The notes below the pieces were generated by a model. The model saw only the letters and a program-made list of their open reading frames with translations, had not been told where the DNA came from and ran no database searches. Below, piece by piece: positions 31,900-59,384 of a stretch of 64,000 nucleotides of DNA (position 1 is its first letter; each line of letters begins with the position of its first letter). The position numbers and the translations under genes were made by a program. Source of the DNA: Epiperipatus broadwayi (lineage: Eukaryota > Animalia > Onychophora); assembly GCA_028023455.1 (NCBI GenBank), contig JAQFVV010000006.1, positions 6,386,001 to 6,450,000 of the forward strand, read 5' to 3'.

Positions 31900-34600
31900 G
31901 CATCCAAATGAACCGGGAAAAGAGGAGATTCATTCAATTAATTGCGTTTTTTAAAATTTACTCAGCTAAAAATAAATTTAAAACCTTTAGCTCTAACGTT
32001 CGTTAATTTATTATTGCGTTGACTACGCAAATCATAAAAGAAATTAATGCAATGCAAAAATATATAGAAGATAACTTACTTATAGCCTAAATTACTGTGC
32101 TATTACAATATCAACAATTAATATTTGAAGTTGGATTAAAAAGTTATTTATCACTCATCAAATAAAGATCACTATATCGCATGCATATACAAACATAACA
32201 CTAAATATTATCCACTGCCTGGTTTAGCGAAATAGTAGAGTGCGGATTCTGTAGTTCAAGGTCTCATGGATCGAGATTCTAGTTGTCATTTCCGGTTTCC
32301 GAACTTCTTATGAATTCCCGAGTAATAAGCTATTCGACTATTATTATATTAACACTGACGCATTCGAGCTAACTTACACGCACACGCTATTTTAACAAAA
32401 AAAAAAAAGTCACACTTTTGCTATAGCCTATGTATAAATAAACACGCGCACACATAACTATGAAAAACGGGGATATTTTTAAAAGTCCAAAAATTTTAAT
32501 GAATGTAAAGACCAATTACATATGCTTTAATAAGATGTAAATGTTCCTACTCCGCGAATTTTCATTAGCGTCTTTTTTTTTTTTTTGAACTCCAATAAGC
32601 TTTTGACTCACACTAGCAGTCATTTATCATATTCTATCTCCGCTTTAGAATTTAATGGGTATAAATTTACACTATTTCATACACTGTTTTTACATAATAT
32701 GTTTCGTTTTAGTTTTATAAGTTAATCCCGAGTACATTTTTCAAGTTCCCTTCCCCTTCCCAAGTTTAACAGAAAAAAAAAAAAAAGATGAGAAGCGTAG
32801 CGAGACTGGTTAATCAATGGGCAAGAACGGCTTTCACCGGTGCTAAGGTATCGTAATAGTTCACTCACTCAAGGAGGTTGTGATGCTTTACTTCTTTACC
32901 CCATCACATCCAAGTTGAGTGAGTAAACTACAGATACATTTCAGGATCAGCTCAAGTTATCCAGGATTTGGTTCAGCAAATGACATTGTAATCCGTGCTC
33001 GGGTAGAAGTTTGGCTCGGCCATTTTATCCAGAATCAAAATGCTATAAACCATTTTTAATCCCGGGATCGCAAACTTATTTTCCATATTTATTTGATTTC
33101 CCTCCCTCGTGTTCGATACAATCAAACCACTCAGAACTTTCTTAAAACTACTTTTCACTATTAGCCATTCTGCTAACTTCGCACTTTTTAAAAGAGTTCT
33201 ACTCACCAGCCCTAGCCAACACCCACAAATGCGCACTCCTATATACTAAAAAAGGTATCCACTATTCAAACGTATTTCTCTTCACTGCTCGAGACCATCT
33301 GTACAAGCATGGTCTAAAACAACAGTAATCTGATTGACAAACACTATTTCTCTAATAATTAATCACATGCTTACAGAAATCATGTGACTATTTAGCCTTT
33401 CCCTTTTCCGTTAGCTGCTACCGGAATAATTTAATCTTAGCCTTTTTTGTACAAATACGTTTTTTTTTTTTTCACTTTAGTTTACTTGTTGTTTTTTTTT
33501 TAAAGTAAAACCGAAACTTATAGATAAAAGTTTTTGATATTAGTTGATTCTTACAAATCAACGATAATAAATGCTTCAGAAAATGAGCCATTCAATTACG
33601 CACCCGAAACCCCCCTCCCCATGCCATCGCCTCAACCATTTGCCATAAAAACACACCCACCAAACAGTCATACTCCAATAACTACAGAAGGTTGGAAAAA
33701 AGTTGTCAGTTTAAACTAGCTTAAACTGAAAGACAAAGAAAAGCATTCATTTTAAATGCGAATATTAGAATATATTATTTACGTTTAAAAGTTATTTTCA
33801 TTATGGTTATTATCTGCGAACAAAATAACTTGACATATATACATATATGAATTTTATTGATGTAAGTTTAACAGTAGGCAGTATTTATATATATTTGTGC
33901 CCATCCTGTTTATACAGGATGGGCTATAAAAAAAAAAAACTTTATGTAAAAAAAATAGTGAATATATATAAAATAGACAAAAAACGCTTTCATAAAAGTA
34001 AAATAGTGAATGCCTACACAAAATTAGCAAAAGAAATTATAAAAGACTTTTACCTAAGCACAAGAATTTAAAAAAATTAAGTCACAGAATATTTACTAAT
34101 GTCATATTATATATATAACAATTTGTTAATTCAGAAAAACTAGGCTAATATGGGAATCTCAATGTGTGTGCGTGTGTGTTAATTGCTTTACATAATTTAG
34201 TATAGAGGTAGAATGTGAATATTCTAAAGTTAAATACCGACGCACGGATGATAACTCAAATTCGCTCTTTTTCCAGAGCTGGAATATCACAGGATCTCCA
34301 GGGAAACAAACTGTTTGTTTGCGTCTTTTACTTATTCACTATCAGTCGCTTGCAAAAGGGTAAGGCCAGTTCTAAATTTAGAAGAAAAAATAAAACATAT
34401 GTTCTTAGAAAAGACAAAATAAAAAGTTTAATGTGTGTTTTACCATGCCTATACAAACCCATCCTAATCTATCGCACGTTAATCCCCCCCCCCCCGACTT
34501 ATTATGAAGCATTCGTTTAATTTCTTCTGAGGTAAACTTTTATTTCTGAAATATTTCAATAGCTTTATTCAAATTTAGCTCTTCATTATATCCTATATCA
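31900..34600. promoter_or_regulatory. CpG-retaining region, candidate promoter or first-exon zone
   Basis: CpG dinucleotides are visibly frequent here and scarce in the flanks. Large repeats are nearly absent. TATA-like TAGTATATAGG on the minus strand near 33237-33247. Confidence 0.4.
32218..32345 (+). mobile_element. SINE family 1, CpG-rich copy
   Basis: GGTTTAGCGAAATAGTAGAG head, GGATCGAGATTC B-box-like, TTCCGGTTTCCGAACTTCTTATGAATTCCCGAGTAATAA tail. Confidence 0.7.
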
Positions 34601-45438: not shown

Positions 45439-45542
45439 GTAAACATTGGTGGTCGAGAGGTCAGCGACAGCTGCTTTACAAGCAGTTGTCCCGGGTTAGC
45501 GGGTTCGCTTCCCGGCTGATGCTATGACACATGGGGAAAAAA
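45439..45542 (+). mobile_element. SINE family 2
   Basis: GGTGGTCGAGAGGTCAGCGACAGCTGCTTTACAAGCAGTTGTCCCGGGTTAGCGGGTTCGCTTCCCGGCTGATGCTATGACAC. Confidence 0.85.
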
Positions 45543-53901: not shown

Positions 53902-54493
53902 CATGAAGGTTTATGATGATGATATTTTAGAAGTGATAATATGTTGGACTATTTCCATCATCTATCATTAAATGTCTAGAAATTTTTCATCTTTATTTAA
54001 ACTTTTCAAATACAAACTTGTTAGTAATAACGTGCATGTAAACAACACAGGTTAGTAATTACACAATGTTATGAGTGGTGTTATTCTCTTTTCTTCAGGG
54101 GTTGCTGGCTTGATCAGTGACAATATTAGTGTAGGAGTTGAACTTACATCTTAGATTCTCAAATAATGAATTTTAAGGCAATGCTCTAACTAACTGAACT
54201 ATCCTGGCAAAGATTTTGAATAGCTCGGTTAGAGCATTGTTTTAAAATTTAATATTGGAGAATCTAAAAGTGTAAGTTCAACTCCTGTGCTAATATTGTC
54301 ACTAGTCAGGCCATCACACCTGTAGAAGAATGAAAAATAATACTACTCAAAACATTGTGTAATTACTAACCAGTATTGTCTATTTGTGTGTTATTACTAA
54401 TATGTTGTTTGCATTATAAAAGTTTAAATAAAGTTTACAATTTTCTAGACATTCAACATTTAGATGATGGCAATAGTCCAAGTTATTATCACA
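53902..54493. mobile_element. Family C fold-back (~260-bp arms, ~35-bp spacer), both HHRs decayed
   Basis: ~53932-54191 is mirrored by ~54226-54493. Degenerate HHRs near 54061-54100 (-) and 54316-54360 (+, CTGTAGA/AAAA). Confidence 0.8.
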
Positions 54494-54497
54494 TATA

Positions 54498-55540
54498 TAA
54501 TTAATTACAATTGTGCTTTACGCAAAAAAGTGAAGCTTGACTAAAATATTATATATGGCTTAGCGCTTTCAGAGACTTCAAGTCTCCATATTTTTAGCCT
54601 TATTTAATTAAAGTTTATTTATTCAAAATTTATGCAAAATTATAAAGCCCAATTTCTGGAGATTGCAAAGCACGACTCCTTGCAGTTTATTGCACAGTTG
54701 TCACATGCAATAAAGCCTGCTTCCTTAATTTTTTGCTTCACATCGTTATGTTCTGTGCACGGTGCTCTTGCCACAGTGGGCTCGAACCCATGGCCTGTCG
54801 CCTTTTGGTGCTCGAGGAATATAGATTTGTTTTCCGCATTATTTATAGCTCTCCGGTACAAATAATGATGTTGAGATGTTCTTGTTGTAATGTTGGCACG
54901 GGTCTCTCCATAATATGTTGCTCTACATCCATTGGTTGGGCATGAAATCCTAAAAACTGCTTGGGCTATTTGATCAGAAGGTATTTTGTCTTTGGTATTG
55001 TTTATCATTCTGTTTGTTGAAGGTGGGGTGTAGAATCCTAGTTCAAAGGACTCAGCAAATATTTTATAATATTTCCCAGCCACTGATGGTATGTAAGGTA
55101 GCAGTATTCTGGGTTTATTATTTTTCATCGTGTCAGTTTGCAACTTAGTTTGAAATTGCCTGATCTTTTTGTAGATAATGTTGTGTGAAAATCCAACATT
55201 TTCTAGCTCTTTAATATAATTTGTGAGGTTCTTTTTGCAGTCAGCTTCAAATTTACATAGTTTGTGATTTCTGTGCAGGAAGGAATTGAGTCCAGCTAAT
55301 TTATGTGAATTGGGCGAGTTCAAATTTGGATGTATAAATCCTCGAATTTCTACTGGCTTGACCATCATTGCATAGGTAAGTTGGTGTGGATCTCTATGAA
55401 CTCAAATAGCCAAATATTTAACATTGTGCTGGAGGTTTTCAGATGTGCAGTTAATTGTTAAGGAAGTTTGTGTTTGTAGCCATATATAATATTTTAGTCA
55501 AGCTTCACTTTTTTGCGTAAAGCGCAATTGTAATTAATTA
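54498..55540 (-). mobile_element. 5'-truncated Penelope-like element (EN+) with 63-bp inverted termini
   Basis: 54498-54560 is the reverse complement of 55478-55540 with one mismatch. It encloses a minus-strand ORF with a GIY-YIG endonuclease, and an HHR-like remnant lies at 54557-54599. Confidence 0.88.
54640..55368 (-). pseudogene. PLE RT thumb/linker plus GIY-YIG endonuclease, uninterrupted 242-aa C-terminal fragment
   Basis: HPN..SP.SHKL and ILLPYIP, then VFRISCPTNGC..TYYGET..TR..QH..EH..TGH: a GIY-YIG with the intervening CC and downstream HH typical of PLE endonucleases. Confidence 0.85.
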
Positions 55541-56035
55541 CTACTCAGAGGTGAAGTAGAAAATTAGTATTTTATCACATGTATAGTAGCTTTTCTCAAT
55601 CTTAGGGTCTGTCGAAATTTTTATGAGTCATAAAATGGTAGAAGACAGACAGAAAACAACAGAGTCGTTTATTCTGTTTTTATTTTCTAATAAAATTGAT
55701 TATTTTGTTAATTTGTTTTCCCAGCAAATAAAATAAATATAATACAAATTTTTTTTTAGTGAGTCTTATTTTTGACATGGTCAGTTTGGCCTTATTATTG
55801 TAATTATTTGATTTGAACAGATAGTAAAGATTCAAGCAGCACCCTTTTATTTGGGTCATGTGCCAATATAAACAAATTTTTTGGATCACAGTGTAAAAAG
55901 GTTGATGCCCTAAAGCAGTGACTTTGGGAGAGATTAATTTTTACCTTCTTAGTTCCTTCTCTCGTGGTTTTCTCTGTGATACTCTTACTATCATAATTTT
56001 ATATCAAATTCAAGAATTTCCCAATTAATTAGTCA

Positions 56036-57651: not shown

Positions 57652-58804
57652 ACATCACATATTCCTTTAGCTTTTATAATATCTAAGCATCATTCAATAA
57701 TATGTTAGTGCCATACTGTATCCTCCCCTATTTGTAAACTGGGTTTAAACTAATGATGCCACCTATTTCCTTAATTTTGGTGTTATTTAAATGCTGTACT
57801 TAAATTCTGGTGAATATACAAAGTTCATGCTCTGTGTTATAACCCGTCAATAAATATATGCTTAAATACCATCAAAACTAAAGAAATAGATGTTATTTTT
57901 TGTTTATTGACAGTAATTATTGGTTTACACATAGCTTATGAAGGATTTAAGTTCCTTCTATTTCAATTTCATATAAGTTAAACTAAGATTATTTATATAT
58001 AGATTTGTGGACGTATTTTTAATAATTTGAAAAGATATTATTCTAAATGATTATAAATGTTAAAATAACAGTAACTGCTAGTTAAATCATTTAGAAGTAA
58101 TTTTAAAAATTGTTTTAAAAAGTTTATCTTAAAATATTATTTTCATCTTATACTATCAAATTTTAATTTTAATGATATTTGAGATGTTAAACATTTCACA
58201 AAAATATGGTAAACAAATGAGAAAAAAATACACATCTTTAATAAATCATCACCATATTTATATAGTCATTTTTATTCATTTATGTTATTTTTATTTTTAA
58301 AATAAATTCTAAAATAAATCCCCCCCCCCCTTCCATAATTCCTTACTAAAGAGCTGTGACGGAAAAGGCAGTATTAAACCAGAAATTCCAATAGTCACCT
58401 AATGAAACTGAATAATTTTCCATTCTTCTTTCACTGGCCAAAAATAGCTAGACATCCACTGTCCGATCAATATTGCATGGTTACTTAGTTTACCTTAGCT
58501 ATTAGAGGAGAAAATCCCAAACTTCAAAATTTTTTTTAGTTTTATCCAGCATAGATTCAAACCCCAGATCATAAATACAGCAGAAAATGTGCTCTCTCTA
58601 CACTATTAGCAGCAATAAATAATATAACAATATTGTCTGAAAGTTTGTGATGATGGTATATTATTAGATGGGATATGTTGAACTATTTCCATCATCTGTG
58701 GGTGAATGTTGAATGTACAGAAATTTTTAAATTTTATTTAAACTTTTCAAATACCAACAACTTGTTAATAATAACACACAATTAGACAACACCGATTAGT
58801 AACT

Positions 58805-58849
58805 ACACAACATTTCGAGTAGTATTAGTCTCCACTCTTCTTCAGGTGT
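58805..58849 (-). ncRNA. Minimal type I hammerhead, family C
   Basis: Minus strand ACAC-CTGAAGA-A-GAGTGG/AGACTAATA/CTACTC-GAAA-TG-TT-GTGT. 6-bp stem II; ATGT inferred to derive from ACGT. Confidence 0.8.
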
Positions 58850-58956
58850 TGTGCTCAGTTGGTTAGATCGTTTGCCTTAAATTCGATATTCAAGAATCTA
58901 AAGGTGCGAGTTCAACTTCTATGCAAATATTGTCACTGTGCATATCAGGCCAGCAT

Positions 58957-58994
58957 CACCTGAAGAAGAATAGAGATATACTCGAAACATTGTG
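58957..58994 (+). ncRNA. Family C hammerhead (stem II partly deleted)
   Basis: CAC-CTGAAGA-AGAATAGAGATATACTC-GAAA-CA-TT-GTG. Confidence 0.65.
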
Positions 58995-59384
58995 CAATCA
59001 CTAACCTGTGTTGTCTAATTGTGTGATATTACTAACAAGTTGTTTGTATTTGAAAAGTTTAAGTTTAAAATTTTCTGAGCATTCATCATCCACTCACAGA
59101 TGATGGAAATAATCCAACATATCACATCTAATAACAATATTGTTACTTGAATAAAATTAAAATTATGAGCCCAAGGCAGTCACATGATACCTAGGCATCA
59201 AAATGACAAAGATTTCTTTCTAAAGCAAAAATAGTACAGTATTTCATTTCACCACTTCGCTGAATTGAATTTTTCATATTTCTATAATAGGTCCTTCATT
59301 CCATTTTTGTAAACCCAAACTCTTCTAAAAATATAAAGAAACTAATTTTATTTAAAATTAAAAGCATAAAGCTAAACTAATCAA

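What the first reader, a model, noticed from the sequence alone, without database searches (positions are those of the whole stretch)
54498..55540. Candidate helper: Penelope-like element whose inverted terminus starts at the predicted ribozyme cut site
Seen: an uninterrupted 242-aa RT-thumb plus GIY-YIG ORF between 63-bp inverted repeats with one mismatch, so the insertion is probably young. Downstream of the stop, the minus strand reads GGCT-AAAAATA-T-GGAGAC/TTGAA/GTCTCT-GAAA-GCGC-TA-AGCC. This is an HHR skeleton with palindrome AGCGCT, correct spacing and a destroyed left core. The inverted copy at 55478 begins exactly at AGCC, the base after the predicted UA cut. Established: PLEs carry HHRs in their pseudo-LTRs and often have an inverted 5' repeat. 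Inference: self-cleavage sets the boundary of the inverted repeat, and a full-length relative could mobilise families A-D.
Basis: partly seen in the sequence, partly recalled or inferred. Interest (0 to 1): 0.85.

Follow-up and report, generated by a model that had tools for sequence, protein, structure and literature searches.

The report
Truncated Penelope-like retrotransposon, ordinary inverted cap
This is an ordinary, dead, shortened copy of a Penelope-like jumping gene inserted in that family's usual head-to-head form, and the match between its inverted end and the predicted ribozyme cut site looks like coincidence, not a mechanism.

Summary
The Penelope-like element (PLE) reading also holds. 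Longer copies carry a reverse transcriptase domain, and relatives of the ORF are 700-870-aa proteins with RVT_1 plus a C-terminal GIY-YIG domain. The insertion has a 14-bp target-site duplication and the published 30-40-nt "tail" on one arm only.

The key inference fails. I called 5' boundaries for 101 sampled copies of the family; 68 abut an inverted partner arm. These boundaries are spread almost evenly from about 40 nt downstream to 100 nt upstream of the predicted cut: 6 lie at the site against 3 expected (P about 0.08), and a second sample gave 1-2 of about 27. In the window, a 3-nt microhomology (GCT) also blurs the junction, so the cap may end 0-3 nt short of the site.

The family's own core is AUGA(A/U)UA, an A3-U8 covariant. 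The window copy has two further private changes (AAAAAUA). This scan had already noted the A3-U8 motif on other DNA of this genome. This copy has no RT and cannot act as a helper.

The parts
54486..54499 (.). Left target-site duplication, TTATCACATATATA
   Evidence: Direct repeat D8 with 55572-55585, 13/14 identical. The same geometry recurs in about 27 of 29 head-to-head pairs of the family.
54498..55477 (-). Body arm: the 3' terminal ~980 nt of a ~2.45-kb PLE unit, 5'-truncated. It ends at the proximal 3' end, without a tail.
   Evidence: 85-88% identical to more than 40 scored copies. Longer copies continue upstream.
54640..55368 (-). Open 242-aa frame: the post-RVT_1 linker/thumb region plus the GIY-YIG endonuclease
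   Evidence: 591 relatives at E<=1e-3, many of them 700-870 aa and aligned at their C-terminus. Those relatives carry RVT_1 plus GIY-YIG.
54823..54972 (-). GIY-YIG core (about residues 133-182: VFRISC...YYGET...R..R)
   Evidence: Aligned to the PF01541 stretches of P0001 and P0004. Pfam does not call it directly.
54557..54599 (-). Minimal hammerhead-like motif with a disabled core (AAAAAUA). The predicted cut lies between 54561 and 54560.
   Evidence: Sequence read; family alignment; closest relatives keep AUGAAUA; no Rfam hit.
54498..54560 (-). 3' terminal segment from the predicted cut to the element's 3' end; left arm of the inverted repeat
55478..55540 (+). Cap arm: a second, inverted copy of the last 63 nt of the element. 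Bases 55478-55480 are microhomology shared with the body.
55541..55571 (+). PLE 'tail' extension, ACTACTCAGAGGTGAAGTAGAAAATTAGTAT..., present on the cap arm only
   Evidence: The same sequence follows the 3' end in about a third of copies. It sits on one arm per insertion. Published feature (PMC8557442, PMC11167929).
55572..55585 (.). Right target-site duplication, TTATCACATGTATA

Best explanation
This is a canonical double-arm ('head-to-head') insertion of an endonuclease-bearing Penelope-like retrotransposon.

**Shown**
- The layout is: 14-bp target-site duplication, then a body arm of ~980 nt ending at the proximal 3' end, then an inverted cap arm of 60-63 nt ending with the 31-nt tail, then the second copy of the duplication.
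- The two arms meet at a 3-nt microhomology.

**Inferred, by analogy with the in vitro work on the Anolis PLE (PMC11167929)**
- The GIY-YIG endonuclease cut both target strands with a stagger of about 14 bp.
- Each 3' end primed reverse transcription of element RNA from one of the two adjacent internal start sites, one of which adds the tail.
- One cDNA ran ~980 nt and the other only ~60 nt.
- The two nascent strands were then joined at the GCT microhomology.

The stopping point of the short arm is a draw from a broad distribution and is not set by the ribozyme. This copy lacks the RT domain, has a stop upstream of its ORF, and has a hammerhead core with two extra substitutions at invariant positions. 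It is an inert fragment.
For: - **Features in the window.** Inverted repeat, ORF and target-site duplication.
- **Family size and truncation.** More than 2900 candidate copies; the 3' motif occurs 2566 times against 0 for the control. Copies are truncated at varied points, and the unit is ~2.45 kb with tandem/pLTR arrangements.
- **Protein identity.** RVT_1 at E=3e-10 in a longer copy. ORF relatives carry RVT_1 plus C-terminal GIY-YIG. The Atlas nearest neighbours are eukaryotic GIY-YIG clusters.
- **Head-to-head is the rule.** 68 of 94 truncated arms abut an inverted partner.
- **Target-site duplication and tail.** A 9-18-bp duplication with the tail on exactly one arm is seen in about 27 of 29 pairs, and the window fits this exactly.
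- **Boundaries.** They are flat around the cut site.
- **Microhomology.** GCT at the window junction.
- **Literature.** Both strands are cut and extended, there are two RT start sites that explain the tail, and hammerhead mutants do not change insertion size (PMC11167929). Inverted 5'-truncated copies and a one-sided tail are typical of PLEs (PMC8557442).
Against: - The mechanism is inferred from a vertebrate PLE studied in vitro, not tested in this animal.
- Motif-anchored arms show a small local excess at the cut site: 5 in [-3..0] against 2.0 expected, P=0.045. This leaves room for a minor ribozyme contribution.
Confidence: 0.85

Rival explanations
1. One reading: the hammerhead cut the template RNA, reverse transcription ran off at the new 5' end, and that run-off cDNA became the 63-nt inverted cap. 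On this view the ribozyme sets the repeat boundary.
For: - The coordinates coincide in the window.
- A few other copies end at or within 1-3 nt of the site, including one palindromic GGCT|AGCC junction.
- Anchored arms show a weak excess (5 vs 2.0 expected, P=0.045).
Against: - Boundaries are scattered from +40 to -100 with no spike.
- Partner arms give 1 vs 1.0 expected, and the pooled count is 6 vs 3.0 (P=0.08).
- A second sample of 100 gave 1-2 of about 27.
- The window junction is ambiguous over 0 to +3 because of the GCT microhomology.
- Three of the 'at-site' cases are fold-backs in which GGCT is shared with the 5' strand of helix I. Stem complementarity explains these without any cleavage.
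- In vitro, hammerhead-dead mutants insert normally with an unchanged product size, and no RNA-seq reads end at the site (PMC11167929).
- The body's core in this copy is AAAAAUA. Whether it was already dead at the time of insertion is unknown.
Confidence: 0.08
2. The inverted cap arose after insertion, by a local inversion/duplication or by a second independent insertion of a 63-nt fragment next to an older truncated copy.
For: Nested and repeated insertions are common in this repeat-rich genome.
Against: - One target-site duplication brackets the whole composite, with the tail on one arm only, as in about 27 of 29 other pairs.
- The arms are 62/63 identical.
- About 72% of truncated copies have the same layout, which points to a single insertion process.
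Confidence: 0.04
3. It is a DNA transposon or MITE-like element with 63-bp terminal inverted repeats and a target-site duplication.
For: Terminal inverted repeats plus a target-site duplication look superficially like a class II element.
Against: - The 'TIR' is simply the element's own 3' end.
- Its length varies from tens of nt to more than 900 nt among copies.
- The coding content is RT/GIY-YIG.
Confidence: 0.01

Closest known systems
Endonuclease-bearing Penelope-like elements with C-terminal GIY-YIG (Penelope/Poseidon, Neptune and Nematis type; Craig et al. 2021, PMC8557442)
   Same: - A single ORF with RT followed by GIY-YIG.
- Heavy 5' truncation and partial tandems (pLTR).
- An adjacent inverted 5'-truncated copy.
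- A 30-40-nt tail at one end.
- A hammerhead motif near the 3' end.
- AT-rich targets.
   Different: - The unit is short (~2.45 kb).
- The hammerhead core is AUGANUA, not CUGANGA.
- The clade within PLEs was not determined here.
PAc (Poseidon of Anolis carolinensis), the PLE characterised in vitro (Frangieh et al. 2024, PMC11167929)
   Same: - Cutting and extension of both strands explains the head-to-head arms.
- Two adjacent internal RT start sites explain the one-sided tail.
- The hammerhead lies tens of nt upstream of the RT start sites.
- The ribozyme is dispensable for insertion.
   Different: - In PAc the hammerhead overlaps the ORF start. Here it lies ~45 nt after the stop codon.
- PAc has a canonical C3-G8 core.
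Minimal dimeric hammerheads of metazoan PLEs (Cervera & de la Pena 2014, PMC4209133)
   Same: - A 6-bp helix II.
[quoted passage not shown]
- A one-pair helix III with a palindromic loop (A-GCGC-U).
- A short helix I.
- Motifs often found in pairs on opposite strands 100-700 bp apart.
- Core covariation already reported (U3-A8 in Schistosoma).
   Different: - The covariant here is A3-U8.
- In the window copy U4 and G5 are also replaced.
- No cleavage data exist.

Membership tests
Penelope-like element (EN+) | Reverse transcriptase domain in the element's ORF | tested here: met
   RVT_1 at E=3.2e-10, 40.5 bits against a cut-off of 29.6, in a longer family copy (L025:1031-1546). It is absent from the window copy, which is truncated downstream of it.
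Penelope-like element (EN+) | GIY-YIG endonuclease C-terminal to the RT | tested here: met
   Pfam does not call it in the window ORF. However, 591 relatives align, and the sampled ones carry PF01541 at the aligned position and RVT_1 upstream. The ORF shows VFRISC...YYGET...R..R.
Penelope-like element (EN+) | Partial tandem copies forming pseudo-LTRs | tested here: met
   The C329 tandem and the upstream partial copy in the extended L006 locus. Not present at the window locus itself.
Penelope-like element (EN+) | Adjacent inverted 5'-truncated copy | tested here: met
   Window inverted repeat. 68 of 94 truncated arms abut an inverted partner.
Penelope-like element (EN+) | [quoted passage not shown] | tested here: met
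   Window 55541-55571. One-sided in about 27 of 29 pairs.
Penelope-like element (EN+) | Phylogenetic placement of the RT with PLE/TERT-like RTs | not tested
   No tree was built. Placement rests on domain order and architecture.
Hammerhead ribozyme (type I, minimal dimeric PLE form) | Core C3-U4-G5-A6-N7-G8-A9 | tested here: not met
   The window has AAAAAUA. The family has AUGA(A/U)UA: A3 in 45/45 and U8 in 41/45 copies, which is a covariant of the C3-G8 pair.
Hammerhead ribozyme (type I, minimal dimeric PLE form) | GAAA, helices I and II, palindromic helix III/loop, H17 not G, extra nucleotide between 9 and 10.1 | tested here: met
   Column counts in 45 copies: H17 is A in 27, U in 13, C in 5 and G in 0; the extra U is present in 45/45. 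The selection regex fixed most of GAAA and the NCU around loop 3, so the counts at those columns are not independent evidence. The co-fold gives an intermolecular AGCGCU helix. These features are as published (PMC4209133).
Hammerhead ribozyme (type I, minimal dimeric PLE form) | Match to curated Rfam hammerhead models | tested here: not met
   No hammerhead hit in the window or in four family loci, even at E<=5-10.
Hammerhead ribozyme (type I, minimal dimeric PLE form) | Self-cleavage after position 17 | not testable with these tools
   The only runs available are kept as contigs, which cannot show RNA ends.

The most novel reading that the evidence does not exclude
A minority of arms (perhaps one in ten of the short ones) may be run-off copies of RNA that the A3-U8 hammerhead had cut in vivo. 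That would give the weak excess seen at the cut site in one sample. If so, genomic junctions would be the first in vivo footprint of PLE hammerhead cleavage, and evidence that an A3-U8 core is active.
Probability: 0.1. Interest if true: 0.55.

Novelty: new member of a known kind. Interest (0 to 1): 0.2.

Why it matters
Had ribozyme cleavage fixed the repeat boundary, genome sequence alone would have shown that PLE hammerheads cut in vivo and feed the insertion machinery, which is an open question. The census shows otherwise. The boundary is one draw from a broad distribution, in line with the in vitro finding that the ribozyme is dispensable for insertion.

What remains useful:
- a clean, quantified picture of PLE insertion anatomy in a very large family (head-to-head arms in about 72% of truncated copies, one tail per insertion, a 9-18-bp target-site duplication);
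- one more confirmation of the conserved A3-U8 hammerhead variant that this scan had already flagged elsewhere in the genome.

Tried and rejected
- **Pfam on the window ORF:** only a sub-threshold DUF6074 match.
- **The search for homologous proteins:** nothing at E<=1e-3. This says little, given its length and word limits.
- **Rfam:** no hammerhead hit in the window or in four family loci.
- **First pattern form with a leading single base:** the tool gave no answer.
- **All-against-all boundary calling:** it over-extended through recurrent fold-back junctions and was discarded. Boundaries were then called only against long contiguous references.
- **RNA evidence:** only two runs, both of uncertain kind and kept as contigs. 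No molecule ends are visible, and depth simply mirrors the excess of 3' fragments.
- **Shared 3' module between this PLE and families A-C in the window:** none. The one weak hit to family C was the window's own flanking fold-back, not the PLE tail.
- **No complex prediction or structure prediction was run.**

Full report
**What is in the window**

The repeat finder reports arms at 54498-54560 and 55478-55540, 63 nt and 98% complementary. The ORF listing gives an uninterrupted 242-aa frame at 54640-55368 on the minus strand. Read further upstream in the same frame, there is a stop 13 codons before the ATG, so the ORF is the tail of a longer gene.

Downstream of the stop, the minus strand at 54599-54557 reads GGCT-AAAAATA-T-GGAGAC-TTGAA-GTCTCT-GAAA-GCGC-TA-AGCC. 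The inner end of the cap (55478) corresponds to the A of AGCC. Rfam finds no hammerhead here, even at E<=10.

**What family it belongs to**

- **Copy number.** The 1043-nt stretch matches the window's own genome (5.6 Gb) at more than 2900 candidate places. The 40 scored copies are 85-88% identical. A 29-nt motif from the 3' end occurs 2566 times, against 0 for the reversed control.
- **Truncation and unit size.** Other copies extend upstream of the window's body by varying amounts. Three long copies define a unit of about 2.45 kb, with partial tandem copies of the pseudo-LTR kind.
- **Reverse transcriptase.** A frame in a longer copy carries RVT_1 (E=3.2e-10, above the Pfam cut-off).
- **Endonuclease.** The window ORF gets no Pfam call of its own. 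An exhaustive HMMER search nonetheless finds 591 relatives at E<=1e-3, many of them 700-870 aa and aligned at their C-terminal end. The sampled relatives have RVT_1 in the middle, and several have PF01541 GIY-YIG at the position that aligns with VFRISC...YYGET in the window ORF. The Atlas look-alikes are eukaryotic clusters carrying GIY-YIG.

'RT-proximal region plus GIY-YIG of a Penelope-like element' is therefore supported. The window copy itself has no RT.

**The ribozyme motif**

Across other copies the same place reads GGCU-AUGA(A/U)UA-U-GGAGAC-loop-(G/U)UCUC(U/C)-GAAA-GCGC-U(H)-AGCC. Forty-five sampled copies reach at least 48 nt upstream of the cut. They were picked with a pattern that fixes most of the 3' half (GAAA, loop 3 and the first bases after the cut), so only the columns outside that pattern are informative:

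| Position | Count (of 45) |
|---|---|
| A3 | 45 |
| U4 | 44 |
| G5 | 43 |
| A6 | 44 |
| N7 | variable |
| U8 | 41 |
| A9 | 44 |
| extra U before helix II | 45 |
| H17 | A 27, U 13, C 5, G 0 |

This architecture matches the published minimal dimeric hammerhead of metazoan PLEs: an extra base between positions 9 and 10.1, a 6-bp helix II, and a one-pair helix III with a palindromic loop. That paper also reports a U3-A8 core covariation (PMC4209133). A co-fold of two real copies forms the intermolecular AGCGCU helix.

The family core is thus an A3-U8 covariant and was never CUGANGA. The window's closest relatives (L118, L065) keep AUGAAUA or AUGAACA. The window's AAAAAUA is therefore two private substitutions at the invariant positions U4 and G5.

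Earlier notes of this scan had already reported the A3-U8 motif on other DNA of this genome. I confirmed it independently here. No cleavage data exist.

**Insertion anatomy**

A 14-nt direct repeat (13/14 identical) brackets the composite at 54486-54499 and 55572-55585. Between the cap and the right-hand repeat lie 31 nt (55541-55571) that recur after the 3' end of about a third of family copies. This is the PLE 'tail', a 30-40-nt optional extension that is often present at only one end of an insertion (PMC8557442). The two adjacent internal RT start sites seen in vitro explain it (PMC11167929).

I scripted a search for flanking direct repeats in every sampled head-to-head pair. About 27 of 29 show a 9-18-bp duplication, with one arm ending 5-18 nt after the motif and the other 40-58 nt after it. 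That is a tail on exactly one arm. The window fits this exactly, at 14 and 47 nt.

I took an unbiased sample of 100 motif-anchored places and fetched them. I called the 5' boundary of each arm against long contiguous references of several subfamilies and asked what lies beyond each boundary.

- Of 101 anchored arms, 94 end within 700 nt of the 3' end, and 61 end no more than about 110 nt upstream of the cut site.
- 68 abut an inverted partner arm, so head-to-head is the rule.

Boundaries are spread almost evenly from +40 to -100 relative to the predicted cut (histogram). Within +25..-45, the counts in the [-3..0] bin are:

| Arms | Observed | Expected | P |
|---|---|---|---|
| Anchored | 5 | 2.0 | 0.045 |
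| Partner (independent of the anchor) | 1 | 1.0 | 0.65 |
| Both | 6 | 3.0 | 0.08 |

A second sample of 100, read by eye from the printed matches, gave only 1-2 of about 27 boundaries in that bin. Three of the 'at-site' junctions are fold-backs in which GGCT is shared with the 5' strand of helix I. Stem complementarity explains these without any cleavage.

At most, a weak enrichment of no more than two-fold remains possible.

**The window junction itself**

Longer copies read ...GAGCT|ACAAACAC where the window's body starts. GCT is thus shared between the cap end (GGCT) and the body. The junction is a 3-nt microhomology junction, and the cap may end anywhere from 0 to +3 nt from the predicted cut. 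With boundaries at roughly 0.5-1% per nucleotide per copy in this zone, a family of more than 2,500 copies is expected to hold dozens of arms ending at the site by chance.

**How it most likely arose**

Shown: the layout, the target-site duplication, the one-sided tail, the microhomology and the family-wide distribution.

Inferred from PMC11167929:
1. The endonuclease cut both target strands with a stagger of about 14 bp.
2. Each end primed cDNA synthesis from one of the two RT start sites.
3. One cDNA reached ~980 nt and the other ~60 nt.
4. The two were joined at the microhomology.

That paper also found that hammerhead-dead mutants insert normally with an unchanged product size, and it found no RNA-seq reads ending at the cut site. 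Both results agree with the flat profile found here.

**The helper idea**

This copy cannot help anything, because it has no RT. RT-bearing copies of its own family mostly carry stops. Other PLE families in the genome, 52-54% identical at the protein level, have many uninterrupted frames of 770-830 aa. I single out none of them. Families A-C in the window share no 3' module with this PLE. The one weak hit was the fold-back repeat that flanks the insertion, which resembles family C.

**Limits**

- RNA runs were available only as contigs of uncertain kind, so RNA ends could not be examined.
- No empty site could be fetched.
- Boundary calls carry an uncertainty of 1-4 nt from chance matches.
- No whole-element consensus or repaired frame was built. 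Only column counts for the 54-nt motif were printed.

**Verdict**

The mechanistic link to the ribozyme cut site is not supported. This is an ordinary truncated member of a very abundant PLE family.

Noticed in passing
L031-L129 and window 54486-55585: In about 27 of 29 head-to-head insertions of this family, the ~37-nt tail sits on exactly one arm and a 9-18-bp target-site duplication brackets the pair. If the two arms chose their RT start sites independently, tail/tail and none/none pairs should also occur. The near-strict asymmetry suggests that the two priming events are coupled.
   Followed up: partly
G000:C26:10338896-10339065, C145:1631459-1631618, C21:12374998-12375167: Recurrent fold-backs in which the reverse complement of the 3' tail segment joins directly onto the hammerhead through the shared GGCT of helix I. 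This places the whole ribozyme in the loop of a long hairpin. I did not check whether these are independent events or copies of one composite.
   Followed up: no
window 53924-54501: A ~580-bp nested fold-back repeat (arms I1, I3-I6) lies directly left of the insertion and contains the left target-site duplication. Its right half has about 2,900 candidate copies in the genome and resembles the 'family C' fold-back at 58625-59143. Rfam gives only a sub-threshold MIR2863 match.
   Followed up: partly
genome-wide: PLE reverse transcriptases are extremely abundant (81,500 first-look candidates). Families only 52-54% identical to this one include many copies with uninterrupted frames of 770-830 aa, whereas this family's RT copies mostly carry stops.
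   Followed up: no
window 32853-32934 (-) and 45443-45523 (+): A mir-67 precursor match above the Rfam gathering score (68.9 bits) and a tRNA match at 34.1 bits. mir-67 suggests that the host is a protostome invertebrate.
   Followed up: no
G000:C173:1337573-1337891 (L108): Both arms of one head-to-head pair carry the same 15-nt internal deletion across the cut site (TTAAAG|CGC). The two arms were therefore copied from the same or an identical template.
   Followed up: no
L029:1300-3995: Contigs of two public runs of uncertain kind cover the element with depth rising steeply toward the hammerhead and 3'-end segment, and none over the 5' part of the unit. This mirrors the genomic excess of very short 3' fragments.
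   Followed up: no
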